Virus record (IMG/VR): IMGVR_UViG_3300020195_000009
Coordinates: 62,001-126,000 of that record
Reading direction: 5' to 3' (one strand)
Length of the DNA stretch: 64,000 bases
The number at the start of each line of letters is the position of its first letter. Positions within the stretch are counted from its first letter, which is position 1. Of the stretch, positions 28,921 through 63,706 are shown one piece after another. The position numbers and the translations under genes were made by a program. The notes beneath the pieces are model-generated. The model saw only the letters and a list, made by a program, of their open reading frames with translations, ran no database searches and had not been told where the DNA came from.

Positions 28921-30474
28921 TTACGTGCTCCCTTTCCCGTCTTGAATGAGACTCTGCTTTGCGGCCCCGAAGTGGGCTTGAATCTTCTCGGCCTTGGAGG
29001 CCAGATCCAAGAGCTGAGGTTGAAGGTCATCGTCGGTCAGGGCCTTCAACTGAAGCATCTCAGCGAGCTTGCTGGAGATGATGTGAAGGTCCATCGTGGC
29101 AACCTTGGTGTTCGTTCGAGGGCTGGTCTCGACGGCCTGAAGAGCAGCCTCAACCTTCGTCAACACGGACGTAGCGAGGGCCTCGTTGAGCGTGGCTGTC
29201 TTGAAGGTGTCTTCTTCCACCTTTGCTTCTTCGCTTGCCGAGAAGTTGGTTGTGGGGCGCCCGCTAGACAGCGTCAGGAAGGCCTTACGGACCCGAATGA
29301 GATAGCCGATGTCCGGGAGGTCAAAGGCGGTCCCAACTCGACCAAGGCCATTCAAAACCCCAAGGAGGCTGAAGAAGACCTTGCCCGTCTTCCCGCTCGT
29401 GTAGGCGGCTTGCGCCTTACGAGCGGCTGCCATGATTTCATCCAAACCTTCGAGGACCATCGCGTCCCCGAACTTGGGGGCGGGATCGAGCCCACCAGGC
29501 ATGGGAACTTCCATCTCTGGTTCGCCGGCAGCCGACTTGAACTTGTCCTTGTTCTTGTCGTTCTGCTTCTTCCACTCATCCGCGTCCTCTTTGGACATGT
29601 TCTCGGTGGGGTCGGCCGGCTTACCCTCCTCGAAGCGGGATTCCTTCTCCTCGCTCTCTTTGCTTTCAGCCCCGGCTGCCTTGAAAGAGAGAACAGCTGA
29701 GGGCGCACTTGCCATGATTTCACCTTCGTCGGCCACCTTGATGTGGCTGTAGTTACCTTCTTCAATGAGAACCTTCTCGTGATCGGCGATGTCCTTCGCG
29801 AGAGCCTCACGGAGCGGCTTCGGGAAGAGCGTCTTAGCCTCTCCTCCGAACTCCTTGGCGTACATCTTGGCGCCTTCATCGACCCAGTACATCCAGAGCT
29901 TGGGGGAAAGGTTGTGGTCGTACTTCCCCGACTTCATCTTGCGAAGGATGTTCTTGAGGATGCCCTCCTTTTGAGAGACGAGACGACCCTCGTTGTCCAT
30001 GTACAGCTCAAGCTCAGTCTTGGCATCCTCGTCGACTGCGCCTTCTTTGGCGATAGGATCTACGGACAACCCGTGAGCAAGTTGCTGGAGGGCCCGTACT
30101 TGAGTAGGCGAGGCAGCATTGGTGATGCCTGCTACCAAAGTCTCCAATGCTGCCAACTTGAACTCGAACGGGTTCATCGTGCTTGCGCCTCTGGGAAGGG
30201 GTCGTGAAACCACAGGGATAAGACGATTCTCATGCACCGCCCATCGGGACCTTTTGGGGCGCAAAAGGTCCTCCATCTCCGTGAGATCCACAGAGAGTTT
30301 CGCCTCCCCTTTGGCGAGGAAAGCATCGAGAACTTTGCGAGCGATGGCCCCGCTCGAAACCAAGCTGGTTACGAACTTCAAAACGGAGACGGACCCGAGC
30401 GTGAAGGTCCTTCCGTCCGGTAGATTCACAAAATCCCGGAAGCCGTCTGTGCCCACTGTCACGAGCATCCCCAT
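28921..30474 (-). CDS. Modular hypothetical protein (candidate internal head protein)
   Basis: 517 aa made of short, unrelated-looking charged modules separated by K-x-A type motifs. Confidence 0.65.
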   Translation of the reverse strand: MGMLVTVGTDGFRDFVNLPDGRTFTLGSVSVLKFVTSLVSSGAIARKVLDAFLAKGEAKLSVDLTEMEDLLRPKRSRWAVHENRLIPVVSRPLPRGASTMNPFEFKLAALETLVAGITNAASPTQVRALQQLAHGLSVDPIAKEGAVDEDAKTELELYMDNEGRLVSQKEGILKNILRKMKSGKYDHNLSPKLWMYWVDEGAKMYAKEFGGEAKTLFPKPLREALAKDIADHEKVLIEEGNYSHIKVADEGEIMASAPSAVLSFKAAGAESKESEEKESRFEEGKPADPTENMSKEDADEWKKQNDKNKDKFKSAAGEPEMEVPMPGGLDPAPKFGDAMVLEGLDEIMAAARKAQAAYTSGKTGKVFFSLLGVLNGLGRVGTAFDLPDIGYLIRVRKAFLTLSSGRPTTNFSASEEAKVEEDTFKTATLNEALATSVLTKVEAALQAVETSPRTNTKVATMDLHIISSKLAEMLQLKALTDDDLQPQLLDLASKAEKIQAHFGAAKQSLIQDGKGST

Positions 30475-30499
30475 GCACTAGGGAACCCTGACAACAAGA

Positions 30500-31375
30500 T
30501 TAGACTCTCAGGAAGACTCCCAACATGTGTGCGACGAGAACCAGGCTCCCGTCCGAGGGTCCGAACAGGTAGTGCCCCTCAACCCTCCAGTTTGCCTCAC
30601 CCCCAGAGAGACGCTCTAGCTCGTTGAGGTGGTAGGCCGCCTGGTTGAGGTCAAAGGCTACCTTGTCACTCTTTCGAGAAGCGATCACGTGGCGGAAGTC
30701 TCGATCCTCCGGTCCAATGAGGACACCACGCAAGAACCCCTGACGGTACAAGCCCCCCCAAGCATCCAAGGAAGGTCTCTTTGCTTCGGCGAAAACGAAC
30801 CCGTTAGTTCCCACCTCAATGATCCTAGGCTTCGTCATCAACGGCCCCACGTTGGGCAGGTTACCGTCGATCACATACTCCCGAATCCACTGAGTAGCCG
30901 ACGCAATGCGCTCCCCCATCTCTTGTTTGGAGACTCCGGTGGGGAAGAAGTCCATCATCCCTTGTAGGAATCTGGCGAGATCGGCATCGACGTGACCCAA
31001 GAAGGGGAGTCCCTTCCGATGAATCAGATCCACGACCGTGACAAGACCGGGGGTAGACGGGTGAATCGCTAGGTCCCGGTGAAGGAACAGAGCCACCGCC
31101 ATGAGGGTGTCGATCCCCTTGATCGACTTCGTTGCGAACGTAAGCGGGAAGGCCGATCCCTCCAGAAGATCCTCGTAGAAGCGGGTCAATGCTCCGGGTT
31201 CGCGAGGTGAAAACTCTTCCCCGTGGTGCTCGTAGGCGAAGTTGGAAGGCTCTTCAACCTGAACCCTTGAGGCGCCGGTCTCAAAAGAGATGGCCTTTTC
31301 AACCAAGACCGGGGCGGTTGAATCAACCAAGACCTGGAAGTGGATCTCAGCCTTTTGTAGCTCCGCCGATGGCAC
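30500..31375 (-). CDS. Hypothetical protein, weak DHH-phosphoesterase-like motif
   Basis: 291 aa; 'AYEHHG' and 'GIDTL' loosely resemble DHH-fold metal-binding motifs; function not established. Confidence 0.5.
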   Translation of the reverse strand: MPSAELQKAEIHFQVLVDSTAPVLVEKAISFETGASRVQVEEPSNFAYEHHGEEFSPREPGALTRFYEDLLEGSAFPLTFATKSIKGIDTLMAVALFLHRDLAIHPSTPGLVTVVDLIHRKGLPFLGHVDADLARFLQGMMDFFPTGVSKQEMGERIASATQWIREYVIDGNLPNVGPLMTKPRIIEVGTNGFVFAEAKRPSLDAWGGLYRQGFLRGVLIGPEDRDFRHVIASRKSDKVAFDLNQAAYHLNELERLSGGEANWRVEGHYLFGPSDGSLVLVAHMLGVFLRV

Positions 31376-31383
31376 GGCTAGAA

Positions 31384-32187
31384 CTACACCGTTCGGTCGT
31401 ACGTGTACCCCGGTTCAATGACGGCCGACTTTTGACAGCCTCCGCAGCAAGGCTGCCCGTCTGCCCGTACCCCTGTACCCCCACAAGCACAAGGCTCGCT
31501 TGCCGTTCGAGTCCGGCCGATCGTCGACACCGTGATGAATGATCCGGTAGCGTTGTCTCGACCCCTCCAGACGATCTCCCCGACCGTCAGGACTTGAGCC
31601 TGCCCACTTTGGCGTTTTGCCAAGACCCTGTCTCCAGGCTTCACATCGCCTTGGATACGAAGACCCCAATCACCGGATTTGAGCTTGGTGAAGGTGGCAT
31701 TGGCCTCTGGGGCGCTTCGCTCAGGCTCGGGTGTTGGCTCTGGCTCTGGATCTCGATCTCGTTGCTCGGGCTCTGGATCGCGTTCTGGCGTAGGTTCGGA
31801 CCGAACCGGGACTCCGGTTGCTTGTGCCTCAAAGACCGCTTCTTTCTCCTCGTACAGCTCAATGAAGTCCTCGACCCGGTCTTGGAGATTGTTCTTCCAA
31901 CCCTGGGTACGTTTGACGATGGGGGCCTTACCCTTCGTCAGAGGCCAAGACCGGCCTCCCTTCCTAGCAAGGAGCTGAATGCGGATAGCATCGGAACCAA
32001 CGTCTGCTCCCGTGTCTCGGCCTGCTCCGATCGAGGTCCAAATGCGGATGATGACGTTCTCGCTCAACGCAAGGTCATAGTAGACCTCACGGCGTTCAGT
32101 TCCCTGCTTAGGGCGAAGTGCTCGCCAGCTACGCAGGATGAACTTCGCCATCTCTTCGAGGGTTACCTCGGTGAATTGAGCGGCCAT
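31384..32187 (-). CDS. Two-domain hypothetical protein with Pro/Glu linker and Cys-rich tail
   Basis: Probable start is the ATG at 32187 (MAAQFTEV), just after the helicase stop, rather than 32343; 'PERDPEPE' repeats; C-terminal 'PCACGG...PCCGGC'. Confidence 0.7.
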   Translation of the reverse strand: MAAQFTEVTLEEMAKFILRSWRALRPKQGTERREVYYDLALSENVIIRIWTSIGAGRDTGADVGSDAIRIQLLARKGGRSWPLTKGKAPIVKRTQGWKNNLQDRVEDFIELYEEKEAVFEAQATGVPVRSEPTPERDPEPEQRDRDPEPEPTPEPERSAPEANATFTKLKSGDWGLRIQGDVKPGDRVLAKRQSGQAQVLTVGEIVWRGRDNATGSFITVSTIGRTRTASEPCACGGTGVRADGQPCCGGCQKSAVIEPGYTYDRTV

Positions 32188-32197
32188 ACCCTGTTTC

Positions 32198-35100
32198 TCA
32201 CGAAGCATTGGACGTCTCCCAGGGGTGTTCCCCGTAAAGATCCATCCCTTCCAGAACGCTTGGATCCGATGACGCTTCCTTGAGGGGGGGCTCTGGCTCC
32301 GTAGGTACTGGAGTGGTTGCCTCTTGCTTGGGTACGTTCTCACCTACAGCCAAGCCGGCCTCCATGACGAACGAACTCACTCCGGCCACCTTACCTCCAA
32401 CTTCCTTAGGGCAAATCACCCGGAGATTCTTGGCTGCTCGGGTCAAGGCCACGTAGGCCAAGCGCCGCTCATCCTCCCAGCGCTCCGCTTCCTTTACCGG
32501 ATCCGGCGGGGGTTCACCAGGTTTTGGCTTGAACTCCATGGGGAACTTACCCTTCGGCATCTGAACGAAGGTGGTTTTCCACTGTGCGCCTTTTGTGGAG
32601 TGGACCGTCCCGAGAAAGACGCCGGGGGGTTTTTGACGCTTCTCCGGGGGAAGAGCGGATTGCTCCTTGTTCCACTTGTCCACGTCCGTCCGAAGGTCCC
32701 TCATCTTGGATGTGTACCGGGCCATTTTGGCCGCGAACCCTTGGGGGGTCGTAGGGGGCGTGATGGCGTCATCTTCGTCCGTTGGATCCGCTTGGGCCAA
32801 CTTGTAAAGGAACGCGACATTCCCAAGACCCTTGGTCTCGTCTTCCTCCTCGTCCTCATCTACAGGCTCTTCATCACCGATAGCATTCCGCAGATTTGCT
32901 TGAAGGCTCGCTCGGAAGGTCTGTTCCCTGAAGACACCGCCTTCTATCGTTACGCCTTCCAACCCCAAGATGTCGTCAAACAACGCCTTCGTGGAATACT
33001 CAGGGTCACTAGACCTCGCCTTGATCTCACCCAGAGCGAGCGCCAGGTCTTGAATCTTCTCCTCAAACTTGAACCCTTTGCCGGTTCGGGTAAGTCGAGC
33101 CAGAGAACTAGCGAGCAACCGGACGAACGTGATGTCTTGGAGGGCCTCGATGGGGTTGATGGACTTGATGGTCTGCCCAACCGTCCTTGCGTAGGTAGAA
33201 AGAGCCTGCTCTACAGCCTCAGGGGCCTTCTTCGGATCCGACAAGAAGAAACGGTTGGGGTTGTTGATGGTCTGCCCCAACGCTTGCTGCATCTTATCGA
33301 AGTCGGAGCCAGTCACAAGCTGGACATAACCTAGAACCGCCTTGGTCTCAGGTGAGCCCAAGAAGGAGCCGGCCCCACGGCGGGCGTAGGGCACCCCTCG
33401 GATAATGCAAGACGTTTCGTAAGCATGCAGCTCCTTGTTCGTACGACACAAGACAGCATGGTCCGTGTAGGACTCCCCGAGGACTTGGTTCTGCTTGATC
33501 TCCTCGATAGCCGTGAGGGCGCCATCCACCTCATCATCGGCAACCCGAACATGAACGCTCCCTACTCCGCGCTTTCGACCAGGAGCCGACACTTGAGGGA
33601 TCGGGACATTCCCATCGTTGTTTGAGATGAGTTGATTTGCTGCATCAACGATCTCCGGCTCACACCGATAGTTAGTGCGGATCACACGAGTCTTCCACCC
33701 CTCCTTTTGGAAGAGTTCCTTGAAGAGAGAGGCTTTGGCACCCTGGAACGAGTTAATCGCCTGCTTGTCATCTCCGACAATCCAGCACGACTTCCCATCC
33801 TCACCATCCGTGATGTGACCAGAGATCATGTCGATGATGTCAGCCATCAACGTGTTTCGGTCTTGGGCTTCATCCACGATGATGTGGTCGAACATCCCCT
33901 GAACCTTGGCCTGGACGGCTGGATTTCGCTTCAGGATGTCCCTGAAGATTTTGAGCATGTCAGTGAAGTCCCCAAGACGCTCCGCCTTGGAACCATGCTT
34001 AGCCATGAAGCTCTCGTAGGCCTTTGACGGACAAGGAGGCTTCCAACCCTTACCGTTGGTCCCCTTGAGACCCTCGTAGATTTCGTACCATTTGGCTTGG
34101 GCAGCCTCTTCGGAGCTTGTCGCTTGCTCTGCGGCCATCGCAGGGGAGATGTCGTTACCCGACCATTTCGCCTTGCTCATGACGGCGTTCTTCAACTTGG
34201 GCGGGGGCTCCGTCTTACCGTAGCAATCTTCCCAAATCTTCTGAACAGCATAGGCTACGTTGTTACCGCCCTCTACGAACCCGGCCCCAAGGGCCGCCTT
34301 CTCCACGGGGGTGCCGAACTCCGTGATGAAGCGTCGGAACAGGGAGTGCATCGTTCCAACAGACATCTGTTGGAGGGCGTCTCCACCGGCTGCTCGGCCG
34401 ATCTTTTCCTTCAGTTCCGTGGCGGCCTGAGTATTGAAACTGGTGACCATGATACGACTCGGGTTGACCCGACGATCACGTACCAAATAGGCAACACGAG
34501 CCACCAACGTTGTCGACTTTCCGGCTCCGGCGCCAGCAAAGACCCCAACCCGTCCATCCGTGAGAGCCGCTGCCCGTTGCTCATCATCAAGCCCGCGAAG
34601 GGGCTCTGGGATGTTCTGAGAGTTGGAGGGATCGCTGGTAGCTGCCGCTGCCGCTGCCACCGCAATACCAACGACCTGAGACTTCGTAAGGGGTTCATCT
34701 AGCTCCCCCGCTCGGTCCATCGACTGACGAGCCGCTGCGGTAGCCTCATCCTGAACCTTCAAGAGCTGCTGGGTCTGAGCCTCTTGGGCTTGCTTCGACG
34801 CATCCGCTCCAGAGGATGCCATTTGGTCGATGTTTTGCTCCAGGAGCTTACCCTTCTGGTCTTGAGCTTCCTTGGAGCCAGCCTCGACAACATTGGCTGG
34901 GAGCTGACCTGAGACGGCTGTTTTCGCCGCTAGTTCAATCCAACCAGCAAGACGCATGTTACGGAAGGTGAGCTTAGCGAAGAGGTCGAGCGCAGCATCC
35001 GCGTTGTCCATCTGAGCGGCGGTCATCGCCTCTCGGACCTGCTTCAAAGCCCTATTGGACTGGAAGACGCCCCGCATGGTGGCGGCACCTCCCCGTGAGA

Positions 35101-35482
35101 GCAACGTACGCAAACCAAGAGCCCGACGACCCACACCTTGGGGGTTTGTTGCCTTCACTTGAAGGTACTTCAGAAGCATGCGCTTGTGGGTCTCAGTAGC
35201 GAGATGCTCCTGAATGAACCCACGGATGCTTTCCAGCTCGGAATCTGCGTTACGAAGGAGCCTGAGCCCCTTCGCAATCACCTCATCGAGGGGGTCTTCT
35301 TGGCTCGTAGCCTCTTCGACGTACCGAATGTAGGTGTCGATGGCGAGGAGGAAAATCACGTACTCGGCGACTTGAAGCTCACCGATCGGCTCGTCATCCC
35401 CATCAACGTCTTCAACCGCCTCGACAGTTCGGGCGGGACGGGTTGCTTCCAAAGCCTGGCGAACTGCCTGTCGGACATCCAT
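32198..35482 (-). CDS. UvrD/Rep/PcrA-family SF1 helicase with ~290-aa N-terminal extension
   Basis: Q motif 'LDDEQRAA', Walker A 'AGAGAGKST', Walker B 'IIVDEAQD', 'VGDDKQAINSFQGA', 'TNYRC', 'TVHSTKGAQW', 'ERRLAYVALTRA'. Confidence 0.95.
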   Translation of the reverse strand: MDVRQAVRQALEATRPARTVEAVEDVDGDDEPIGELQVAEYVIFLLAIDTYIRYVEEATSQEDPLDEVIAKGLRLLRNADSELESIRGFIQEHLATETHKRMLLKYLQVKATNPQGVGRRALGLRTLLSRGGAATMRGVFQSNRALKQVREAMTAAQMDNADAALDLFAKLTFRNMRLAGWIELAAKTAVSGQLPANVVEAGSKEAQDQKGKLLEQNIDQMASSGADASKQAQEAQTQQLLKVQDEATAAARQSMDRAGELDEPLTKSQVVGIAVAAAAAATSDPSNSQNIPEPLRGLDDEQRAAALTDGRVGVFAGAGAGKSTTLVARVAYLVRDRRVNPSRIMVTSFNTQAATELKEKIGRAAGGDALQQMSVGTMHSLFRRFITEFGTPVEKAALGAGFVEGGNNVAYAVQKIWEDCYGKTEPPPKLKNAVMSKAKWSGNDISPAMAAEQATSSEEAAQAKWYEIYEGLKGTNGKGWKPPCPSKAYESFMAKHGSKAERLGDFTDMLKIFRDILKRNPAVQAKVQGMFDHIIVDEAQDRNTLMADIIDMISGHITDGEDGKSCWIVGDDKQAINSFQGAKASLFKELFQKEGWKTRVIRTNYRCEPEIVDAANQLISNNDGNVPIPQVSAPGRKRGVGSVHVRVADDEVDGALTAIEEIKQNQVLGESYTDHAVLCRTNKELHAYETSCIIRGVPYARRGAGSFLGSPETKAVLGYVQLVTGSDFDKMQQALGQTINNPNRFFLSDPKKAPEAVEQALSTYARTVGQTIKSINPIEALQDITFVRLLASSLARLTRTGKGFKFEEKIQDLALALGEIKARSSDPEYSTKALFDDILGLEGVTIEGGVFREQTFRASLQANLRNAIGDEEPVDEDEEEDETKGLGNVAFLYKLAQADPTDEDDAITPPTTPQGFAAKMARYTSKMRDLRTDVDKWNKEQSALPPEKRQKPPGVFLGTVHSTKGAQWKTTFVQMPKGKFPMEFKPKPGEPPPDPVKEAERWEDERRLAYVALTRAAKNLRVICPKEVGGKVAGVSSFVMEAGLAVGENVPKQEATTPVPTEPEPPLKEASSDPSVLEGMDLYGEHPWETSNAS

Positions 35483-35519: not shown

Positions 35520-35858
35520 TTACACCGTTTCCCCGAGGGACCGCAGCATCACCTTCATCGCCGAGAAAACGGAGCCAGCCGAGTTCTTGAAGTTCTCCAA
35601 CTGGGGCTTGTATTTCCCCGGATCGCTCTTGTACTTAGAGAGCGAGGACCTCATCTGCTTGACCTCGTCTTCGGTACTATCCAAGAGCCGGTCCAGCTTG
35701 GGGAGGTTGACTTCACCTTCGACGGCACCGACCCGGTCCGCAAGCTCCCGAAGTTCCTCAGCCACCCGCTCACGGCTTGGGTTGGGGCTCTCGGCGTACG
35801 AAAGAACCCGACGCAACTCGACTTGCAGGTCACGGGAAGTAGCGAGCTTCTTCATCAC
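35520..35858 (-). CDS. Hypothetical protein
   Basis: 112-aa helical ORF, MKKLATSRDLQVELRRVL... Confidence 0.65.
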   Translation of the reverse strand: MMKKLATSRDLQVELRRVLSYAESPNPSRERVAEELRELADRVGAVEGEVNLPKLDRLLDSTEDEVKQMRSSLSKYKSDPGKYKPQLENFKNSAGSVFSAMKVMLRSLGETV

Positions 35859-35949: not shown

Positions 35950-38900
35950 CTAGATTCTAGCTCTGAGGTTGAATGTGAGCACAAGGTAGAGGAGCGGGAA
36001 GATCGGCTGGTAGAAGGCCTCTGCCCTCAAGATGGTCGGGTCCTCCGTGTCGACCTGAGCCGAGATGCCCGTGAAGGCCGCCACGATCTCCTGCTGGATG
36101 AGCTGCTTGAAGAGTGAGGTCATCGAGACCTCGACTTCATTGACTCGGGAGGACAGGATCTTGGTGCCGACGAAGGCATCGAGAACCGCCCTGGAGTTGA
36201 TCGACACGAAGTCGGCGATCTGGGTGACCGTCGGAAGCCTCGTGAGCACCGACGTCATGTTCGTGGTGAGACCCTGGCGAACCCGAACGATCGGGTCGAG
36301 GTCTTCCAGGAGAGTCACACCAGCCGTTGCCGTCTGGTTCAGCTCCACCGCATCGAGGATACGTGGGATTCGGGTGAACCCCTGAACCCTTCGACGGGTG
36401 TAAGGAGTCGCCACGTCAATCGCAGGGCTGCATACGGCACCTGCAACGGCCGCCGCGAAGAACGATCCGTCCACCAAGGTCTCGAAGGTCTCCCCCAGCT
36501 CGTTGGAGAGGGTGATGACCGAAGAGTCCGGGTAGAAGGCAACCATTCGCTGGCTGACAAGACCCCGAGCGACCGTTTGGGCCGTCGTGGGAGTCGTCCC
36601 ACTTGCGAACCCGATGAATCCCATCCGTTCCGACTGGTTGCGGATGTTGCTCTGGATCTCGCAGTGTTGGGTGAGGAACGAGTAGACCGCCGTGTCCGTG
36701 GCGAGCGGGATGATGACGTCTGGCTTGATGTTGCCAGGTAGCGGGGTCCCTAGCGCTTGGATCGCGTCGATGAACGACTGAGCCGAGGCTTGATTCGTAT
36801 TCGGAACCTTGAGGACCTGCTTGACTCCAACGAGGACGGCCCCATTGAGAATTGTCAGGAAGGCTCCGAGCGTGACCCGATTCTCAGCCGAGAGTGTCCC
36901 GAAGTTGGCCTGGATCGTCTTGAACTGACGGAAGATCCGGGTGGAAAAGTCCTGCTTCAAGAAGCGGTACGAGATGAAGTAGAAGTCCCCGTTCTTGGGC
37001 TCCACTCCACTCGGGTTGAACGTCTGAAGCGTTGCCGTATCGTTGATCCCGACATTCACCGTGTTGGTAACGATGGTCTCCAACCCAGGAATCGAGAGGT
37101 ACGGTACGGACGGGTTGACGTTCCACGTTGGAGAGACATCCATCGTGAAGAAGCCGCCCGTGTTGTACGATCCATCTGCGCTCGGAAGAACCGTGAACCG
37201 AAGGCCAGACCTGACGTCCGTGTACGTCTGACCAGGGATACCCGTACCCGCCGACCCGATGGGGTTGTTCGAGGTGACGACAAAGTTGTCGTAGACGCCT
37301 TCTCCACTGTCCCCATCCGTACCTGGAACAATCTGCGTTCCAGTCAGGACGTTGAAAGCCGAGTTGGTTCCCGTCACGAAGGCGATTGCAGACGTTGTAC
37401 CCAGCACGACGGACTCGATGGTGAGGTACGTCTGAGCGTCGATGACCGATGGGTAGGTCACGGCACCCGTCGCACTGGGCGTCGGAGGGGACCAGGTGGA
37501 AACCGCAAAGCCTATGGTATCCATGAGGCGATCGACAACCTCTTGGACTGACACTCGGGTCTGGCTTGCGAAGTCGCCTTCGTTGAAGCCGAAAATCGCA
37601 TTGGCCGAGCCGTTGAGGATGAGGACAGCGCTCTGGTCGCTGTTGGTGTTCGAGGTGATGCGAATCTTGTTGAGGTTTGCACCCGTTCCAACGCTGGCCG
37701 TTCCTTGAGAGGAGATGGCCGCGTTGATATCGATCACAACCAGAGCTGCCGTTGTCGACGCTGGGTTGACGATGGCAGTGAAGTCGATCCCGTTGACCCG
37801 GACCTTGAACTCATCACTCACCCCACTCACGACAGAGAAGGGTTGAGCGAGAGTACCGAGAATCGTAGCCGCCTTGTTGACGGCTCCGGTTGTACCGTCT
37901 GCCCGCTGGAAGGTCGTGAACCCCAGCGTCGTCTCCGCAGTACCCTGACGGATAGCGGAGTAAGACGTGTGGTCGAACCCTGCCGGAAGGGCGGTTGGGA
38001 CTGCGTAGCTCCGAAGCACGAAGAACGTGCTGGAAGCACCCGGCCCAGGGATCGGCGTGAACATGTTGTTCGGGGCCGTCCCAAGGAACGTGGCGTTCGC
38101 ATCGATGACTGCATTGACTGCGGTTGCAATCGCAGCCGGAGTGATCGCCGGACCTGCTGGAAGCGTGACGGTGAGATCGACACCGTCGATGGTGATCTCC
38201 AACAAGTCGTTGACGGCTGCTGTGATGAGAACGCCACCACCGCTGAGGGGGACAGCTTGGCTGACGAGATAGCCGCGAGTAGCGACATTCAAGTTGGTAG
38301 CGAGCGTTGATCCGCCGTTGAGAACCGTTCGCCAGGTTGCCGACGAAGGACCATAGAAGGAGAACGGTTGGGCTCCCTTGTTCGTGTACACGGCATTCGT
38401 AGCCGCACTCACTCCGAAGGTGACCGTGACGGTCTCAGAAACCGGCGTACCCCCAAAGTGGAAGACATCCGGGATCTGCTCCACCCCACGAGGCCACTGG
38501 ACCGTGTCCACAAGGCCGCCGCCCTTCGACCCGAACCGGACTTGAAGAACGTTCGAGTTGAAGAGGGAACTGAAAACCTCGAACTGACCCGTTCCGATGG
38601 GACCGGGAGTCTTGTTGGTGAGGATGTACGTGTCGTCCGCGATGCGGTTGTAATAGAAGGTGGCGAACGCCTTATAGTCAGGCGGGACCGCATCCTTCAA
38701 GGTGATCTTGCGGGATACCCCATCGACAGCCAAGACCTTGGCGACTGGACGATTGAGGGCGTCCCGGAGGTTTCGACCCACACGGACCACAACGAGGTCC
38801 GGGCGGTTGGAGATGAGGTCTTGGCGCTGGTTGGTAGCCGCAAAGAACAGATCCAACCCAAGGACCGTGTCACGACCGTTGCCGGTCGTCGGGTTCGTGG

Positions 38901-40248
38901 GGAGGAGGAACTCCGTCGTGGAGGTCCTAGCTGGGACAACCGAGTTGTCGATGAACCGAGCACACTCCGCAAGCCAGAGCTTGTCGTCCACCAAGGTGGG
39001 ACCGATCTGACTGTCATCAAACAGCTCAGCGCCAGGGGTGCGCAACGTCGAAGAGACGGCGTAGCTGGTACCCCAATGGATGATCGACACGTCCGGGGAC
39101 GGGTTCGACACCACGAAGTCCTGGTTTTGAATGAAGTCTGCACGACCGGGAGAGATGCCGGCCCGGATCACGTTGGTGACCAGAGTGTTGGGGAGGTAGT
39201 CGAACGTATCCTGCCAGGTGTTGGCGAAGTACGTGATGAGGACTTCCGAGCCAGGAGCAGGAGCCGTGGGCAACGTAACCGTGCCGTTCGTCCCATCGAC
39301 GGAAGCCGGAATCACCTGGACTCCGTTGACCTTGGCGACAACCTTGCTCGGGTCCGTCGTTGTAAGGCCAGCGCTGGTCCCATCTACAATGGGGCGCTGG
39401 AAGACCTTGTAGGTAGCGTTACGGGCCGTCTTTTGACCGTTGACCAGACCAAGGATACCGTTCGCGTTGCCATCCCCAATTTCAATTGAGGTAGCCGCGT
39501 TGAACTGAAGATGCAGAGTGCCGTCGTTGGCCGTGAAGACACTCGTAGTGAGACCGACGATCGCGGCTGCATCGATCTGGGTCTTGAGGGACGATGCGGT
39601 TGCCGCAGGGGCAACCGTGAACGTAACCGATACCTCGGCTCCCCCGTTCACCTTGATCCTGAAGTTGTCGTTCGCCCCAGCGGTGATGTTGAACGTCTGG
39701 TAGCCGGGAGTGACGATTTCTGCCGTCGTCGTCGTCACCTGGTCGGACAAGTCGTCCGTGAAGGCCGTGTCGCCCCGGTGGAAGAAGTAGGTGCAACGAA
39801 CGACGTCCGTTGGTTGCGGAGGGACTTGGAGGATGACTTCTCCGGTTGAGCCTCGGACGGCTCCAACCGCCACCGGGATCCCGTTGACCGTCACGGTCAC
39901 GGATCGGACGTCGTTGGTCGTTCGACCGAATCCTTGCCCATCTACGATGGGGAAATTCCGAATCTTGAACCGCGTCCGAGTCCCATCATTCACCCCAAGA
40001 ATGGGGTTGGCCGGGTTGGAGTCATCGACAATCCAACGGACCGTGATGTCCTCGTTGACGATCTGCTGGTCAAGAGTCGATGACGAACCTCTCACCATCT
40101 CCAGGTCGAGCTGCTCCAGCTCTTCCTGACCCACACCAATGACGGTGGGGATGCGAAGGCCTGCGATGAGCGCAGCCACATTCGCTTCCGTCAAAGTACG
40201 AGAGTAAACGCCAGGAGGAACGTACGTAGTGAAGGGGCCCAACGCCAT
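35950..40248 (-). CDS. Contractile tail sheath protein with large insertion domains
   Basis: N-terminal 'YVPPGVYSRT'; C-terminal 'VRVRQGLTT...RLPTVTQIADFV...AFVGTK...YQPIFPLLYLVLTF' are sheath signatures. Confidence 0.92.
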   Translation of the reverse strand: MALGPFTTYVPPGVYSRTLTEANVAALIAGLRIPTVIGVGQEELEQLDLEMVRGSSSTLDQQIVNEDITVRWIVDDSNPANPILGVNDGTRTRFKIRNFPIVDGQGFGRTTNDVRSVTVTVNGIPVAVGAVRGSTGEVILQVPPQPTDVVRCTYFFHRGDTAFTDDLSDQVTTTTAEIVTPGYQTFNITAGANDNFRIKVNGGAEVSVTFTVAPAATASSLKTQIDAAAIVGLTTSVFTANDGTLHLQFNAATSIEIGDGNANGILGLVNGQKTARNATYKVFQRPIVDGTSAGLTTTDPSKVVAKVNGVQVIPASVDGTNGTVTLPTAPAPGSEVLITYFANTWQDTFDYLPNTLVTNVIRAGISPGRADFIQNQDFVVSNPSPDVSIIHWGTSYAVSSTLRTPGAELFDDSQIGPTLVDDKLWLAECARFIDNSVVPARTSTTEFLLPTNPTTGNGRDTVLGLDLFFAATNQRQDLISNRPDLVVVRVGRNLRDALNRPVAKVLAVDGVSRKITLKDAVPPDYKAFATFYYNRIADDTYILTNKTPGPIGTGQFEVFSSLFNSNVLQVRFGSKGGGLVDTVQWPRGVEQIPDVFHFGGTPVSETVTVTFGVSAATNAVYTNKGAQPFSFYGPSSATWRTVLNGGSTLATNLNVATRGYLVSQAVPLSGGGVLITAAVNDLLEITIDGVDLTVTLPAGPAITPAAIATAVNAVIDANATFLGTAPNNMFTPIPGPGASSTFFVLRSYAVPTALPAGFDHTSYSAIRQGTAETTLGFTTFQRADGTTGAVNKAATILGTLAQPFSVVSGVSDEFKVRVNGIDFTAIVNPASTTAALVVIDINAAISSQGTASVGTGANLNKIRITSNTNSDQSAVLILNGSANAIFGFNEGDFASQTRVSVQEVVDRLMDTIGFAVSTWSPPTPSATGAVTYPSVIDAQTYLTIESVVLGTTSAIAFVTGTNSAFNVLTGTQIVPGTDGDSGEGVYDNFVVTSNNPIGSAGTGIPGQTYTDVRSGLRFTVLPSADGSYNTGGFFTMDVSPTWNVNPSVPYLSIPGLETIVTNTVNVGINDTATLQTFNPSGVEPKNGDFYFISYRFLKQDFSTRIFRQFKTIQANFGTLSAENRVTLGAFLTILNGAVLVGVKQVLKVPNTNQASAQSFIDAIQALGTPLPGNIKPDVIIPLATDTAVYSFLTQHCEIQSNIRNQSERMGFIGFASGTTPTTAQTVARGLVSQRMVAFYPDSSVITLSNELGETFETLVDGSFFAAAVAGAVCSPAIDVATPYTRRRVQGFTRIPRILDAVELNQTATAGVTLLEDLDPIVRVRQGLTTNMTSVLTRLPTVTQIADFVSINSRAVLDAFVGTKILSSRVNEVEVSMTSLFKQLIQQEIVAAFTGISAQVDTEDPTILRAEAFYQPIFPLLYLVLTFNLRARI

Positions 40249-43273: not shown

Positions 43274-43978
43274 CTAACGACGTTTCCAGAGATCAGCCGC
43301 CGTCTTAGGTGCCGGCTTCCCTCTTTGGAGGAGCAAGTAAACGTGCTCCTCGTGCTTGTCCTCAATCCCAGCAAGGAGGTTATCTGTACCACGTGAGAGC
43401 CGGTCGACTTGCTCCAAAGAGGCAACCATCTGCTTCACGCAGTCCAAGAACCATCGTTCCGCTTTAAGAGAGGTCGCGATGAACGAGTCGGGGTTCTCAC
43501 CTTCCCCGAAGGTCTCCCCGTCCCCACAGAGGGCCTCCACTACCAGAGCCACTTGCTTGGCTTGGGCACCTGGATGGATCATAGACAGCGGGCTGCCTTG
43601 ACCTACCGCCCGCTCCGCAACTTGGTCGATCTCTCCAACTACATCGTTGTAGAGGCGATCAAAGAGCAAGTGGTCCGCGTAGAAAACACCACCATACGTG
43701 AGCCAGTGGTGGCTTTGGTGGACCATTGCAAGCGACCGAAGGAGCGTCAGGATGGCGGGAAGAACCGCCTCGGGGGCTGCAATTGTGGCCTCAAGGACCC
43801 CCGCTACCACTTCTCGAACCGAAGCTACTCGACCCTTAAGCTCAGGGAGGTAGGGCGGTCCTTGCGTGTACGGGTCGTAAGATGAGGGATCCTGCCAAAT
43901 CGAATGGGAGGCATCCTCGGAAGGTGTTACGGGAGCAAATGGGTAAGCCCCAACCTTTTTCCACGCAAGAGGGTTCAC
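43274..43978 (-). CDS. Dps/ferritin-like protein with N-terminal extension
   Basis: 'HQSHHWLTYGGVFYADHLLFDRLY....EIDQVAER' matches the Dps signature H-W...G..F...H..F...Y......D..AER. Confidence 0.85.
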   Translation of the reverse strand: MNPLAWKKVGAYPFAPVTPSEDASHSIWQDPSSYDPYTQGPPYLPELKGRVASVREVVAGVLEATIAAPEAVLPAILTLLRSLAMVHQSHHWLTYGGVFYADHLLFDRLYNDVVGEIDQVAERAVGQGSPLSMIHPGAQAKQVALVVEALCGDGETFGEGENPDSFIATSLKAERWFLDCVKQMVASLEQVDRLSRGTDNLLAGIEDKHEEHVYLLLQRGKPAPKTAADLWKRR

Positions 43979-44709
43979 TTGAACCTCTGCTCCATCTGCT
44001 TGGCGACGAGCGCTGCCTTTTCGGCGAGAGTCTTGATCTCAGGCATCACAAGAGCGAGCACCAAGGTGGGGTCTTCGGTTCGCCCCACGCCAACCTTTTT
44101 CAGGCGAGCAGACCTCTGAGCCGCCTCTTTGAGGCCTTTGACGACCTCTCCGAACTGATCCGTCAAAACCTTGAGGGCTGGGTGGCTCTCCCCTTGGTCA
44201 AGGATCTCCGCAGCCATTTCCCACTGCTCTTCGGAGCCTGAGACAATCGCTACTTTCCCCCCTTTAGGGGGTAGCCTTGACGGGGTGGCTTCCTTGTTCT
44301 TCAGTTCCTTACCAACATCATTCAGAGTCGATTTATCGGCCTTGGGGGTGAAGCTCTTGCCGGAATAGGGACTCTTGAGCGTCCCCGTCATCTTCTTCGG
44401 GAGGAAGAACTCCTTGCCGTCCCCATCGACATACTTGAAGAGAGCGCCTTTGACTTTGGCACCCTCTTCCTTCAGTTCCTTGCCAACATCACCCATCGAT
44501 GAGCGTTCTGGCTTCCCCGTGAAGCTCTTGCCGGAATAGGGACTCTTGAGCGGACCTATTTTCTTCTCCGGTAGGTAGAAATCCCCACCCTCTTCATCCG
44601 TGTACTTCCAAAGCACGGCGGCCGAAGTCTTCTCGATGAGATTGGCGGTACGATCGAGAAGGGCCTGCTTGGGATCGGTTGTGAGCATGGATCGTCTCCG
44701 TAAACCCAC
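43975..44709 (-). CDS. Hypothetical protein with a duplicated 57-aa domain
   Basis: Two copies of '(W/F)KY.D..G..F.LP.K..G.LKSPYSGKSFT.K...S...DVGKELK'; probable start is the ATG at 44688. Confidence 0.75.
   Translation of the reverse strand: MGLRRRSMLTTDPKQALLDRTANLIEKTSAAVLWKYTDEEGGDFYLPEKKIGPLKSPYSGKSFTGKPERSSMGDVGKELKEEGAKVKGALFKYVDGDGKEFFLPKKMTGTLKSPYSGKSFTPKADKSTLNDVGKELKNKEATPSRLPPKGGKVAIVSGSEEQWEMAAEILDQGESHPALKVLTDQFGEVVKGLKEAAQRSARLKKVGVGRTEDPTLVLALVMPEIKTLAEKAALVAKQMEQRFK
44348..44552. repeat. 34-bp identical direct repeat, 171-bp period
   Basis: gtgaagctcttgccggaatagggactcttgagcg at 44348-44381 and 44519-44552. Confidence 0.9.
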
Positions 44710-49664: not shown

Positions 49665-50219
49665 TCACCCTCGCCAACTGTCATCGAGGACGAAGTTTGG
49701 GTCCTTGATCACGCTGTAGAGGCCCTTAACGTAGGATTCGAGGTCCTGCGTATACCCGTAGGTGTTTGCAGCCGCGTGGAGCTTCTGGGTTGCCGGAGCA
49801 CTCTTCGCTTTCAGGTGGTCGATCTTGTTCGACTTCAACTGGCGAATGCCCCTCTCCATCATCTCCAGCGTCGCCCCTCGGGCGTCTGCATCATCCCCCT
49901 CGGAGTCTTCAACGAGGGTAATGTACGACTTCAAGAGACCCTCGGCCGCCTTTACGGCTTTATCGCTGTTCTCGAATAGTTTGTCGTAAGCTCGGTCGAA
50001 CTTCTTTGCCGCAGAGCTGTCGGCGTTCTCGACCTTCTTCTTCAACGACTCCAGCTCAGAAAACAGCTTCTTGTTCTCTGCGAATCGAGCTTCCGATTGA
50101 TCCGCAGCCTTCCCGGCTGGAGCGTGGTTGACACCCCTCGATCCTTGCCGCCCCAGGAACCTGGAAGCCACACGGCGATGGAGGAGGGCATCTTGAAACG
50201 CTCGAAGGGGCTCAGTCAC
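49665..50219 (-). CDS. Hypothetical helical protein (candidate internal head protein)
   Basis: 184 aa; N-terminal 'LHRRVASRFL'. Confidence 0.7.
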   Translation of the reverse strand: MTEPLRAFQDALLHRRVASRFLGRQGSRGVNHAPAGKAADQSEARFAENKKLFSELESLKKKVENADSSAAKKFDRAYDKLFENSDKAVKAAEGLLKSYITLVEDSEGDDADARGATLEMMERGIRQLKSNKIDHLKAKSAPATQKLHAAANTYGYTQDLESYVKGLYSVIKDPNFVLDDSWRG

Positions 50220-58153: not shown

Positions 58154-58154
58154 G

Positions 58155-61316: not shown

Positions 61317-61375
61317 GGGAACTCCTCTTTGGCCGCTGCTTCCTTAAAAAGGAAACATAAGAACCTTCTCAAAGC

Positions 61376-62387: not shown

Positions 62388-62388
62388 G

Positions 62389-62793
62389 TCACTTCGACCC
62401 GGCTACAAGATGATCATAGGTTGCAGCCGCCTCGTTACCCTTCTCGGTACGGGCCAGCTCTTGGGCCTCCCTCCAGGAGCCGGTCTCAACCCCCTCGTAG
62501 TTTGCCTGAAGGTTGGCTTTGAAGACGTGGTCCTTCTCTTTTTTGGCCAGCATGTCCCGCCGCTTCGCCCGGTAGGCGTTCTCTTTGATGGACTTGCTAG
62601 CCCACCCCCCAGACTCACCCTCCTTGAGAATGAACCCTAGGTTACCGGGGGCGAAGCCAATTTGAGCTGGAAGGCCGCAGGTCTTGCAGGCGAGGGCTTT
62701 GGTGCCAGCTTTTACTTGGTCGTACTCCGAGTACGACAGGCGTTGGTCGTGGGTTTCACCGCATTCAAGGCATTCGATTTGGTACGTCGGCAC
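62389..62793 (-). CDS. FmdB-family zinc-ribbon protein
   Basis: 'MPTYQIECLECGE...ACKTCG...FILK....GGW'; GTG start with GGGAG RBS. Confidence 0.85.
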   Translation of the reverse strand: MPTYQIECLECGETHDQRLSYSEYDQVKAGTKALACKTCGLPAQIGFAPGNLGFILKEGESGGWASKSIKENAYRAKRRDMLAKKEKDHVFKANLQANYEGVETGSWREAQELARTEKGNEAAATYDHLVAGSK

Positions 62794-62806
62794 GGTCGAT
62801 CTCCCT

Positions 62807-63706
62807 TCATTTCATTTTCATTTCACGCTGAATAGCGTGGCGGAAAGCATCCTCTGCGGCGGTCTTCTTCTTGGGGATCTCCCACTTACGAACATGACCA
62901 ATGACAGCCGATACGTGTTTGCAAACCCGATTGATCCTCTCGGGGTCTTTAATGTTCGGAGTTGAAGCCGTACCCACGGGCTTACCGTCTATGTACGCCT
63001 CACCCTTCGCATGGAACTCGGAACCCAACCATCTCCAAGCATGGCAGGAGCATGAGAAGTGGGCGTCCATCTTGGTCAAGGCTTTCACTACCCCTTTGCG
63101 GGTTGCCTTAAGCTTGACCATCTTGGGGCCGTTACCGCAGTTGACAGAGAAGATCCAACGAAGATTGCCAACATCCACTCGTTTGACGGAAACAGCGCAA
63201 GTTTTGGATCGGTCGACGACCTTGGGGTTCAACCCCTCTTCAATCTCGGGAAACCGGGCAGCAATCCGCACCAAACCCTCAAGTGGTACCAAGACCTCAT
63301 GGGCCGTCCGTAGCAACCAGAGCTGCGTCACAGACTCAACGAGGTGGGCGTTGTGACGGTTGGGGATCTTGTCCCGGTACGGGTAACGGGTCTTGGAATA
63401 GTCGTTGTCGGGTCGTTCACCAAGCCCGTTGTAGCTAGGTTGGGCTTTCGAGTGGTCGATCTCGTCCGCCCGCCCTTGGTCCTTCAACAGATCGTCGGCG
63501 TTGTCGACATGGTAGATCGACTGGTTGTTCATGGAAGGCTCTCGGGGAGGCTCGCCGGGTGGCTTTGCAAACGTAGAGGACCCAGGGATAGCGGGGTCCA
63601 AAGACAAGCCCTTCCCCGCCGGGTCACCACTGGGGAGCTTGGACTCCGAAAGTGCCGACCCACCCGCTGTGCCGTAAGGCGGGCGAATAACAAGCGGCTG
63701 GATCAT
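62807..63706 (-). CDS. SWIM-type zinc-finger protein with disordered N-terminus
   Basis: 'FSCSCHAW...RVCKHV' is the CxC...CxH SWIM motif. Confidence 0.8.
   Translation of the reverse strand: MIQPLVIRPPYGTAGGSALSESKLPSGDPAGKGLSLDPAIPGSSTFAKPPGEPPREPSMNNQSIYHVDNADDLLKDQGRADEIDHSKAQPSYNGLGERPDNDYSKTRYPYRDKIPNRHNAHLVESVTQLWLLRTAHEVLVPLEGLVRIAARFPEIEEGLNPKVVDRSKTCAVSVKRVDVGNLRWIFSVNCGNGPKMVKLKATRKGVVKALTKMDAHFSCSCHAWRWLGSEFHAKGEAYIDGKPVGTASTPNIKDPERINRVCKHVSAVIGHVRKWEIPKKKTAAEDAFRHAIQREMKMK

What the first reader, a model, noticed from the sequence alone, without database searches (positions are those of the whole stretch)
28921..63706. Recurring K/R-x-A motif marks a set of late proteins: possible protease-processed virion cargo system
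Seen: non-structural-looking proteins scattered through the late operon carry K/R-x-A at apparent module boundaries or termini. Examples: 517 aa (HIKVA, SFKAA, KFKSA, TFKTA, NTKVA); 244 aa (KVKGA, KNKEA, GGKVA, flanking the duplicated domain); Dps (KGRVA, APKTA); SWIM (LLRTA, LVRIA, KKKTA); 267 aa (RTRTA, CQKSA); helicase (AAKTA, PLKEA); 112 aa (MKKLA); 184 aa (HRRVASRF). Known: T4 and phiKZ prohead proteases cleave internal head proteins at short motifs ending in Glu, removing targeting propeptides. Inference: an Ala-specific maturation or targeting code packages these proteins into the head as polyproteins or cargo for ejection. The motif is short, so chance occurrence is a real risk.
Basis: inference. 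Interest (0 to 1): 0.75.

Follow-up and report, generated by a model that had tools for sequence, protein, structure and literature searches.

The report
Alanine cleavage code in megaphage heads

Summary
The window is part of a 286 kb contig from an uncultivated, phage-G-like megaphage. All cited peptides exist. Genome-wide, [KR]-x-A is not enriched (894 vs 868), and five of the eight cited proteins are explained by chance or conserved core residues.

The motif is nevertheless real. The most enriched protein in the genome is the scaffolding protein, encoded just outside the window between the head-maturation protease and the capsid protein. K-x-A is the top pattern of about 600 tested in that family (51 vs 12). 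The enrichment recurs in distant relatives, including cultured phage Tunturi_5.

Published N-terminal sequencing of phage G's capsid protein puts its cut after an alanine that aligns with K-L-A in ours.

Inside the window, the 517-aa and 244-aa proteins carry the signal (83/83 and 49/55 homologues above expectation). The Dps-like protein has a site in a conserved linker position.

It is present in 517 protein clusters, usually ends in F-K-x-A, and sits between unrelated domains.

Best reading: K-[T/V/Q/E]-A↓[S/A/G] is the prohead protease site in modular head proteins. Cleavage, packaging and ejection remain untested.

The parts
28921..30474 (-). 517-aa modular protein, the best in-window candidate substrate. 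Folded blocks at residues 1-72, 101-250 and 413-513 are separated by low-confidence linkers.
   Evidence: 13 [KR]xA vs 7.7 expected. Orthologues give 12/6.9, 10/7.3 and 16/6.4. All 83 database homologues exceed expectation. AF2 model has mean pLDDT 72.7, and 7 of 13 sites lie within 5 aa of linkers.
29530..29688 (-).
   Evidence: The module recurs 1-5 times per protein in 517 protein clusters. At the C-terminal boundary F is 95%, K 97%, A 82% and the next residue is A/S/G in 74%, after which conservation collapses. 73-81% of copies end in [KR]xA and 52-59% have one just upstream.
29731..29745 (-). HIKVA site (residues 244-248) at the end of the N-terminal helical domain.
   Evidence: G-x-Y-D-H-L-K-x-A is kept in all five orthologues. 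It lies 5 residues before the 253-285 linker.
43975..44709 (-). 244-aa protein built of ~55-aa LWKYTD...DVGKELK repeats plus a C-terminal EEQWE domain. Sites KVKGA (nt 44443-44457), KNKEA (44287-44301) and GGKVA (44248-44262) lie at unit boundaries.
   Evidence: 8 vs 3.6. 49 of 55 homologues exceed expectation, ratio 1.57. The alignment shows K-x-A (sometimes K-G-S) ending each repeat, and [KR]-x-A|[ST] before the C-terminal domain in 4 of 5 orthologues.
43274..43978 (-). Ferritin/Dps-like protein with a conserved N-terminal segment (WQDPSSYDP...GPPYLP), a variable linker carrying KGRVA|S (nt 43823-43837), then the ferritin domain. Possible N-terminal propeptide.
   Evidence: Weak ferritin/Dps hits. 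All 5 orthologues have [KR]xA|[S/A] in the linker; the joint chance is about 0.002 if independent. There is no overall enrichment (3 vs 2.4).
32198..35482 (-). 1094-aa UvrD-family helicase. Motif-rich, but not a convincing substrate.
   Evidence: PF00580/PF13361. 28 vs 16, p about 0.001. Many sites are conserved inside UvrD domains. The 40%-identical orthologues are only weakly enriched (22/18.3 and 25/18.2).
62807..63706 (-). Not supported as a substrate.
   Evidence: 4 vs 3.9. LLRTA and LVRIA are conserved core positions, while KKKTA is not conserved. No Pfam hit.
31384..32343 (-). Not supported.
   Evidence: 4 vs 3.9; family z 0.4.
35520..35858 (-). 112-aa ORF. MKKLA is simply its N-terminus. 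Not supported.
   Evidence: 2 vs 1.3. It has no syntenic orthologue, and its sites are not kept in the one weak homologue found.
49665..50219 (-). 184-aa ORF (HRRVASRF). Not supported.
   Evidence: 6 vs 4.2, p 0.22. No orthologue in the four relatives.
35950..40248 (-). Context: 1432-aa tail sheath, not motif-enriched. It shows that the window is mainly a neck, tail and baseplate region.
   Evidence: 31% identity to the Tunturi_5 sheath gp326. 76-77% identity in relatives. 7 vs 8.3.
28189..28917 (-). Context: 242-aa virion structural protein immediately downstream of the 517-aa gene.
   Evidence: 47% identity to Tunturi_5 gp329. In Tunturi_5 the gene just upstream of gp329 is the K-x-A-rich 'DNA ejection protein' gp328 (25 vs 13.5).

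Best explanation
K-[T>V/Q/E]-A followed by S/A/G is the recognition site of this clade's head-maturation (prohead) serine protease, which cuts after the alanine. The protease is a 555-aa protein encoded just outside the window (L035:7997-9664, minus strand). It lies between the portal and a 482-aa Gln-rich scaffolding protein, and the HK97-fold capsid protein follows. After the prohead assembles, the protease would do four things. It would dice the N-terminal third and free the C-terminal end of the scaffold. It would trim about 25 residues from the capsid protein at K23-L-A25. It would trim the portal's N-terminal tail. It would cut modular head-internal proteins at K-x-A sites that flank their domains and a portable 44-residue acidic spacer module. 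Within the window, the 517-aa and 244-aa proteins, and probably the N-terminal extension of the Dps-like protein, are such substrates. What is shown: the motif statistics, the module, the gene order, the homology, and the published phage G capsid cut. What is inferred: that this protease makes the cuts, that K/R sits at P3, and that the window proteins are inside the head.
For: Head module: the gene order portal, protease (phrog_18299), scaffold, capsid (phrog_2522) is conserved in four relatives and three distant contigs.

Scaffold: it is the most enriched protein of 313 (15 vs 5.2). K-x-A ranks 1st of about 600 patterns under local shuffles, 51 vs 12, z about 13. In one orthologue 12 of 15 lysines are in K-x-A.

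Independent replication: Tunturi_5 gp332 has 20 vs 7.3 while its sheath has 6 vs 6.3. The L046, L047 and L052 scaffolds give 10/4.0, 11/6.3 and 12/5.3. Phage G's protease gives 10/3.4 and its gp21 8/3.9.

Experimental anchor: phage G capsid protein goes from 282 to 255 residues by N-terminal sequencing (PMC5646251). That is a cut after A27, which aligns with the invariant L24-A25 of our K23-L-A25|A.

Module: the boundaries coincide with K-x-A. Non-module parts of 122 independent module-bearing clusters have 1683 vs 1089, with controls at 0.82-1.08.

Shared consensus: scaffolds, the 517-aa family and the 244-aa family share the same P2 Thr and P1' Ser/Ala preference.

Specificity: Cpn60, SNF2 and UDG on the same contigs are not enriched.

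Protease: His130 and Ser181 are invariant, and K295-A-A297 just after the catalytic domain is kept in 52 of 52. Its atlas neighbours are prohead proteases of the S77, S78 and S80 families.
Against: No cleavage has been observed in this phage or its close relatives. The only experimental site, in phage G, has Ala rather than Lys at P3. The protease's catalytic domain could not be modelled (pLDDT below 50), and it matches no Pfam protease family or solved structure. The 517-aa gene lies among tail genes. Positional conservation of sites in orthologues is no higher than for control motifs (0.36 vs 0.30-0.49). Site mapping to linkers in the 517-aa model is not significant on its own (P 0.13). Some enriched families, such as the tail-terminator-like 398-aa protein and the helicase, are unlikely head substrates. 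This shows that family z-scores are inflated by shared ancestry.
Confidence: 0.65

Rival explanations
1. The motif is real but is read by something other than the prohead protease. Candidates are another protease (some module proteins and their neighbours carry Peptidase_C39-like domains; phage G packages ClpP/ClpX), or a non-proteolytic docking motif that binds the scaffold, the coat or DNA.
For: A C39-like domain occurs in the module protein P0180 and in a neighbour of P0281. [quoted passage not shown] No direct link between the 555-aa protease and the sites has been shown.
Against: The strongest enrichment is in the protein encoded next to the prohead protease, and in that protease itself. 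The phage G capsid cut after the homologous Ala is a classic prohead-maturation event. C39 peptidases are known for Gly-Gly sites (my own knowledge). Sequence conservation stops exactly after the Ala and one small residue, which is how a scissile boundary looks.
Confidence: 0.2
2. The enrichment is a by-product of mobile low-complexity cassettes. These acidic or Gln-rich linkers happen to contain K-x-A and spread by duplication and recombination, and the tripeptide itself has no function.
For: Repeated units such as KEA-GELPPWLK, QQKQAQ and the 44-aa module are shared between different proteins and move between families.
Against: Enrichment persists after masking the modules and their boundary zones (1683 vs 1089). 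It also persists under 15-30-aa local shuffles. The Tunturi_5 scaffold-position protein gave no hit in a local tblastn at E<=1e-3, yet is enriched. Isolated sites occur in non-repetitive contexts: capsid K-L-A, scaffold HPE-KTA|S, and the Dps linker.
Confidence: 0.08
3. The whole finding is chance plus post-hoc selection of proteins that happen to contain a very short motif.
For: There is no enrichment genome-wide or window-wide. Picking the best 8 of 36 proteins yields on average +16 excess sites by chance. Five of the eight cited proteins show nothing.
Against: Control motifs are flat throughout.
Confidence: 0.05

Closest known systems
phiKZ / 201phi2-1 / SPN3US head maturation (prohead proteases gp175 and gp245; motif S/A/G-x-E or A-x-E)
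   Same: A giant phage with a dedicated prohead serine protease. A three-residue motif recurs many times in scaffold-like and internal head proteins, the portal, the capsid protein and the protease itself. Propeptides are cut at multiple sites (PMC10052503).
   Different: P1 here is Ala with Lys/Arg at P3, not Glu at P1. The protease does not match Peptidase_S80 or S77 by sequence. The capsid protein is a short 290-aa HK97-type protein with a separate scaffold. A conserved, portable 44-aa spacer module has no described counterpart in those phages. Nothing here has been confirmed by proteomics.
T4 gp21 processing and the capsid-targeting sequence of internal proteins (L/I-x-E motif)
   Same: The concept is the same: a short N-terminal targeting peptide removed by the prohead protease, and a scaffold core degraded at many sites (my own knowledge; also summarised in PMC10052503).
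   Different: The motif is different. The candidate targeting element is about 44 residues, often internal and repeated, and not only N-terminal: 23 of 300 copies are at the N-terminus and 22 at the C-terminus. Targeting has not been tested.
Bacillus phage G head (protease gp19, capsid gp27, decoration gp26)
   Same: The capsid protein is homologous (38% identity). The protease is homologous, sharing the YKTFIG...H and SMGC motifs and the Cys-rich insert. Phage G's capsid protein is cut after the alanine that aligns with our A25. Its protease and gp21 are also rich in K-x-A.
   Different: In phage G the P3 residue at the capsid site is Ala. Its protease is 300 aa and lacks our 250-aa C-terminal helical domain. 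No cleavage motif, and no acidic module, has been described for phage G in the papers I could read.
Herpesvirus assemblin maturation sites ((V/L)-x-A↓S)
   Same: Ala at P1 and Ser at P1', in a capsid-maturation protease that also cleaves the scaffold (my own knowledge, not tested here).
   Different: P3 here is basic. Any relationship of fold or ancestry is untested, because our protease model was too poor to compare.
HK97-family prohead protease (Pfam Peptidase_S78)
   Same: It pairs with an HK97-fold capsid protein in a portal, protease, scaffold, capsid cassette, and the catalytic His precedes the Ser. Models of the nearest atlas cluster resemble S78 proteases (TM 0.57-0.68).
   Different: There is no S78 sequence match. 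Our protease has a four-Cys insert and a large C-terminal domain.

Membership tests
Prohead-protease-processed head protein system (T4 / phiKZ / HK97 type) | A dedicated maturation protease gene inside the head module, beside the portal, scaffold and capsid genes | tested here: met
   The 555-aa protein matches phrog_18299 'head maturation protease' (E 4e-12). It lies between the portal (phrog_16240) and the scaffold and capsid protein (phrog_2522, PF05065). The order is conserved in relatives.
Prohead-protease-processed head protein system (T4 / phiKZ / HK97 type) | Conserved catalytic His and Ser, with the His preceding the Ser | tested here: met
   H130 and S181 are invariant in 52 of 52 homologues and shared with phage G gp19. 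Their catalytic role is inferred.
Prohead-protease-processed head protein system (T4 / phiKZ / HK97 type) | Assemblin-like protease fold | tested here: inconclusive
   AF2 pLDDT is below 50 across the catalytic domain and there is no PDB profile hit. The only support is atlas neighbours that are prohead proteases.
Prohead-protease-processed head protein system (T4 / phiKZ / HK97 type) | A short motif over-represented in the scaffold or core proteins, and present in the capsid N-terminus, the portal and the protease itself | tested here: met
   Scaffold 51 vs 12, rank 1 of about 600. Capsid K16-T-A18 and K23-L-A25. Portal tails in 4 of 5. Protease family K-x-A ratio 1.70, and K295-A-A297 kept in 52 of 52.
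Prohead-protease-processed head protein system (T4 / phiKZ / HK97 type) | Cleavage at the motif observed in virions or proheads | not testable with these tools
   The only evidence is a literature anchor in a relative: phage G capsid protein goes from 282 to 255 residues by N-terminal sequencing (PMC5646251).
T4 / phiKZ-type cleavage specificity (x-x-Glu↓) | Glu at P1 | tested here: not met
   The enriched motif ends in Ala, while [DE]-x-A and other controls are flat. The phage G cut is after Ala.
Pfam Peptidase_S77 / S78 / S80 | Sequence match to the family model above its cut-off | tested here: not met
   No PF03420 or PF04586 match in the 286 kb record. None of the 52 family members hits any protease family, even at E<=1.
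Capsid-targeted internal or ejection proteins (T4 IPs, phiKZ inner-body proteins, P1 Dar) | The protein is physically present inside the capsid and is delivered to the host | not testable with these tools
   No proteomics exist for this clade's module proteins. The only hint is a Tunturi_5 'DNA ejection protein' annotation (gp328) for a K-x-A-rich protein in the equivalent gene position.
Capsid-targeted internal or ejection proteins (T4 IPs, phiKZ inner-body proteins, P1 Dar) | A removable targeting peptide bounded by the protease motif | tested here: inconclusive
   The 44-aa module is bounded by K-x-A on both sides and sometimes sits at the extreme N- or C-terminus. The Dps-like protein has a conserved N-terminal segment followed by a site. 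A targeting function has not been shown.

The most novel reading that the evidence does not exclude
The 44-residue acidic module (...ESRFEEGKPADPTENMS.EDA..WK...DKNKD.FK.A) is a portable capsid-loading tag. It would dock on the scaffold or the inner capsid surface, carry arbitrary passenger domains into the prohead as polyproteins, and then be excised by the K-x-A-specific prohead protease. Passengers seen so far include a C39-like peptidase, DUF7007, the LWKYTD repeats and many unknown domains. That would give phage-G-like megaphages a modular, evolvable system for packaging proteins that are co-injected with the DNA.
Probability: 0.3. Interest if true: 0.85.

Novelty: new variant of a known kind. 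Interest (0 to 1): 0.68.

Why it matters
Proteolytic head maturation has been worked out in only a few phage lineages, and it is known there with Glu at P1. This result predicts a different code, K-x-A↓ with a small residue next, for a large and globally distributed clade of 300-600 kb soil and sediment megaphages. That clade includes two cultured members, phage G and Tunturi_5, so the prediction can be tested immediately by proteomics and peptide assays.

If the code holds, it lets annotators recognise scaffolds, propeptides and head-internal proteins in genomes where most genes have no annotation. It also reveals a conserved excisable module found in more than 500 protein clusters. That module may be a natural cargo-loading tag, which would be useful for understanding what megaphages inject and for engineering capsid cargo.

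Tried and rejected
- **DNA search:** megablast of 6.4 kb of the window against GenBank phages found nothing.
- **Family libraries:** PHROGs and Pfam left most window proteins unannotated.
- **Known protease families:** T4-type (PF03420) and HK97-type (PF04586) proteases were sought in the genome and not found.
- **First gene caller:** my first crude ORF picker replaced the 517-aa gene with an ORF on the opposite strand and had to be redone.
- **Positional conservation:** aligned K-x-A sites are kept no more often than control motifs. I therefore relied on enrichment with site turnover, not on site conservation.
- **Longer motif:** [KR]xA[AGS] genome-wide is not clearly enriched.
- **Family z-scores:** scores from five related genomes are inflated for highly conserved families. 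I discounted the 398-aa terminator-like protein and the helicase for this reason.
- **Protease structure:** the prediction failed in the catalytic domain, so I ran no fold search. The PDB profile search and the per-member Pfam scan gave only zinc-ribbon noise.
- **Module identity:** the atlas search with the module alone returned noise, and PHROGs has no family for the module or its carriers.
- **Literature:** the phage G cryo-EM/proteomics paper (PMC7316594) is not held. Neither the 2025 phage G multi-omics paper nor the Tunturi paper reports cleavage data.
- **Not attempted:** I did not try complex prediction, because the protease domain could not be modelled.

Full report
**What the window is.** The 64 kb window is bases 62,001-126,000 of a 286 kb IMG/VR viral contig that CheckV rates about 60% complete. 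All genes in it are on the minus strand. Its relatives are uncultivated megaphages of 380-512 kb with terminal repeats. By capsid protein, the relatives include an uncultured 485 kb phage (84% identity), the cultured Acidobacteria myophage Tunturi_5 (48%), Bacillus phage G (38%) and cluster-C mycobacteriophages (about 30%).

Comparison with Tunturi_5 and the family libraries shows the window is mainly a neck, tail and baseplate region. It contains:
- a head-tail connector (296 aa);
- a minor tail protein (471 aa);
- a terminator-like protein (398 aa);
- a 1432-aa sheath;
- a gp329-like structural protein (242 aa);
- an SLT-domain protein and several giant proteins.

Accessory genes are interspersed. 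These include a UvrD helicase, a volactin-type actin, a ferritin/Dps-like protein, a GP4-gp80-like head fibre, and a lipase-bearing island that is absent from the relatives' syntenic regions.

**Observation check.** All cited peptides exist. [KR]-x-A is not enriched in general:
- 894 observed vs 868 expected genome-wide;
- 206 vs 198 in the window;
- a near-null spread of per-protein p-values (12 of 313 below 0.05).

The eight cited proteins pooled give 68 vs 43. This is specific to this spacing and survives local shuffles. Selecting the best 8 of 36 proteins by chance would already yield about +16 sites. The observed +25 has P about 0.02 against that, and the motif ranks 6th of 537 comparable motifs. 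Taken alone, this would be weak.

**Following the signal.** The contexts showed recurring units: K-x-A followed by A/G/S, often after acidic or Gln-rich spacers. Ranking all 313 proteins of the contig put a 482-aa Gln-rich protein first (15 vs 5.2). It is encoded just beyond the window's right edge.

Annotation of that region gave a canonical head cassette, in this order:
- portal (602 aa);
- a 1310-aa protein;
- a 254-aa protein;
- head-maturation protease (555 aa, phrog_18299);
- the 482-aa protein, in the scaffold position;
- a 216-aa protein;
- HK97-fold capsid protein (290 aa, phrog_2522).

In the five scaffold orthologues, K-x-A is the single most over-represented gapped dipeptide of about 600 tested under 15- and 30-residue local shuffles. 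The count is 51 vs 12, z about 13, with the next pattern at about 7. In one orthologue 12 of the 15 lysines are in K-x-A. Several sites keep their position: HPE-KTA|S, LP-KTA|S, QQ-KQA|HAV-RTA|S and a C-terminal [KR]-[ED]-A|FG.

The near-invariant capsid protein carries K16-T-A18 and K23-L-A25. Four of five portals have [KR]-x-A in the N-terminal tail before a Gly-rich stretch. The protease family itself has a K-x-A ratio of 1.70, and K295-A-A297, just after the catalytic domain, is kept in 52 of 52 homologues.

**Independent replication.**
- In Tunturi_5, the protein between the protease and the capsid gene (gp332) has 20 vs 7.3. The annotated 'DNA ejection protein' gp328 has 25 vs 13.5. The sheath has 6 vs 6.3.
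- Scaffold-position proteins on 620 kb, 453 kb and 37 kb contigs give 10/4.0, 11/6.3 and 12/5.3.
- Phage G's protease gives 10/3.4 and its gp21 gives 8/3.9.
- Myrna's 1211-aa protein next to its capsid gene gives 31/16.4.
- Ordinary enzymes on the same contigs (Cpn60, SNF2, UDG) are not enriched.

**Experimental anchor.** Hua et al. 2017 (PMC5646251, Table 1) report, from N-terminal sequencing, that the phage G capsid protein gp27 is 282 residues as encoded and 255 when mature. In the gp27 sequence this places the cut at ...G-R-V-A-L-A27|Q28. In the alignment G, R, L and this A are invariant, and the homologous position is G-R-A-K23-L-A25|A in our phage and G-R-Q-K-L-A|A in Tunturi_5. So Ala at P1 has experimental support in a homologous protease and capsid pair. 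Lys/Arg at P3 is my inference from the enrichment, and phage G has Ala there.

**A conserved excisable-looking module.** Database homologues of the 517-aa protein often share only residues ~274-317 with it, at 70-89% identity. That segment is a 44-residue acidic module with consensus xxEEKESRFEEGKPADPTENMSPEDAKKWKxxHDKNKDxFKxAA.

Over 100 distinct copies, the C-terminal boundary reads F 95%, K 97%, x, A 82%, then A/S/G 74%. Conservation then drops to background. A [KR]-x-A lies at that boundary in 81% of copies. Another lies within eight positions upstream of the module start in 52%, against 20-26% in control windows.

An exhaustive profile search of 1.84 billion representatives found the module in 517 clusters, 457 of them at E<=1e-10, with 2-5 copies in proteins of 180-1600 aa. 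A fresh set of 122 such clusters (300 modules) gave these results:
- 73% of modules end in [KR]-x-A and 59% have one upstream;
- 23 modules sit at the extreme N-terminus and 22 at the extreme C-terminus;
- the non-module segments carry 1683 vs 1089 [KR]-x-A (ratio 1.55, z 22), with controls at 0.82-1.08.

The module is unknown to Pfam and PHROGs; the 'OAS1_C' hits are simply the module itself. It occurs once each in G000, G001 and G002, in different protein families, and not at all in G003 or G004. Those two genomes use a K-x-A|GELPP[WA]LK unit instead. Module proteins are encoded near head cassettes or beside large enzymes.

**Consensus.** Distinct K-x-A contexts from the scaffolds, from the module-masked 517-aa family and from the 244-aa family independently favour Thr at P2 (3.3-4.3-fold). 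They also favour Ser (2.6-4.1-fold) and Ala at P1'. This gives K-[T>V/Q/E]-A|[S/A/G], with F at P4 at module ends.

**Verdict on each cited protein.**
- *517 aa: supported.* All 83 homologues exceed expectation. HIKVA keeps its position in all five orthologues at a domain end. SFKAA and KFKSA flank the module. The AF2 model shows folded blocks joined by linkers.
- *244 aa: supported.* 49 of 55 homologues exceed expectation, and the sites end each LWKYTD repeat and precede the C-terminal domain.
- *Dps-like: plausible.* All five orthologues have [KR]-x-A|[S/A] in the linker after a conserved N-terminal segment. The joint chance is about 0.002, and there is no overall enrichment.
- *Helicase: enriched but unconvincing.* Its sites sit largely at conserved positions inside UvrD domains, and replication at 40% identity is weak.
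- *SWIM-like, 319-aa, 112-aa and 184-aa proteins: not supported*.

**Mechanism and rivals.** The best explanation (confidence 0.65) is that the motif is the prohead protease's cleavage site. If every site in our scaffold were cut, the fragments would be small N-terminal pieces, one 208-residue Gln-rich core, and a freed C-terminal end. The rivals are:
- another reader of the motif, either a different protease or a docking function (0.2);
- hitch-hiking in mobile low-complexity cassettes (0.08);
- chance plus selection (0.05 for the core signal, though it is the right account of five cited proteins).

**Limits.** No cleavage, virion location or ejection has been observed for any protein of this clade, apart from the phage G capsid N-terminus. 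The protease's fold could not be modelled, and it fits no curated protease family. The atlas places it among prohead proteases only at lead level. The 517-aa gene lies among tail genes.

**Comparison and novelty.** The logic matches T4 and phiKZ/SPN3US maturation (motif A-x-E; PMC10052503). It differs in specificity (Ala at P1, basic P3), in protease family, and in the portable spacer module. I found no prior description in the searchable literature, which is not proof that none exists. I rate it a new variant of a known kind.

Noticed in passing
window 42206-43246 (-): A 346-aa protein matches the Pfam Volactin family (an actin homologue) over its full length with E 8e-71. It is conserved at 61-76% identity in all four relatives, so this megaphage clade encodes an actin-like protein between the tail-terminator-like gene and the Dps-like gene.
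   Followed up: partly
L035:4801-5673 (-) (genome 130801-131673): The 290-aa capsid protein is 96-98% identical among five genomes whose other structural proteins are mostly 30-80% identical. That is an unusually strong constraint on one protein.
   Followed up: partly
window 55795-61699 (-): Six ORFs have no counterpart in the syntenic regions of the four relatives. They include a lipase/alpha-beta-hydrolase-like 357-aa protein and a 644-aa ORF. This looks like a strain-specific island inserted in the structural region.
   Followed up: no
G002:C1:204280-207222; proteins P0032, P0041, P0057, P0096 and others: The head-maturation protease gene is interrupted by an insertion of about 400 aa in G002. 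Many homologues carry Hint, intein or LAGLIDADG domains, so inteins have repeatedly invaded this protease.
   Followed up: no
Scaffold L035:6503-7951 (-); 517- and 244-family orthologues in G003 and G004 (L027-L034): A second short unit follows K-x-A in several different proteins: KQA|GQMPPQFKENAEKKKEEA in scaffolds and K[ED]A|GELPP[WA]LKD, tandemly repeated, in G003 and G004. A 'DPWK' motif also recurs after K-x-A|S. These may be alternative spacer or docking units in genomes that lack the 44-aa module.
   Followed up: partly
window 3262-5436, 5648-11866, 13426-15609 (-): The giant tail or baseplate-like proteins (724, 2072 and 727 aa) and their orthologues are depleted in K-x-A (family z -2.0 to -3.3). 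This is the opposite of the head proteins.
   Followed up: no
L035:18318-19388 (-) (genome 144318-145388): A 356-aa protein matches the catalytic core of eukaryotic-type DNA topoisomerase I (PF01028, E 6e-22). It is encoded just upstream of the portal region.
   Followed up: no
L036:2400-4451 (-) (genome 148400-150451): A 683-aa Cys-rich protein has 19 [KR]xA vs 10.4 expected, and 9 [KR]xA[AGS] vs 2.7. It is the second strongest protein in the genome on the four-residue motif. Its function is unknown.
   Followed up: no
L053:2614-6249 (Mycobacterium phage Myrna gp97): The 1211-aa protein is annotated 'tape measure', but it is encoded directly upstream of gp98 and the major capsid gene and is rich in K-x-A (31 vs 16.4). 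The annotation may be wrong; it could be a head-internal or scaffold-like protein.
   Followed up: no
window 50788-51186 (-): A 132-aa protein matches the head-fibre protein gp80 of Ralstonia podophage GP4 (PF23140, E 6e-38; phrog_240 'head protein'), although this is a myophage-type genome.
   Followed up: no
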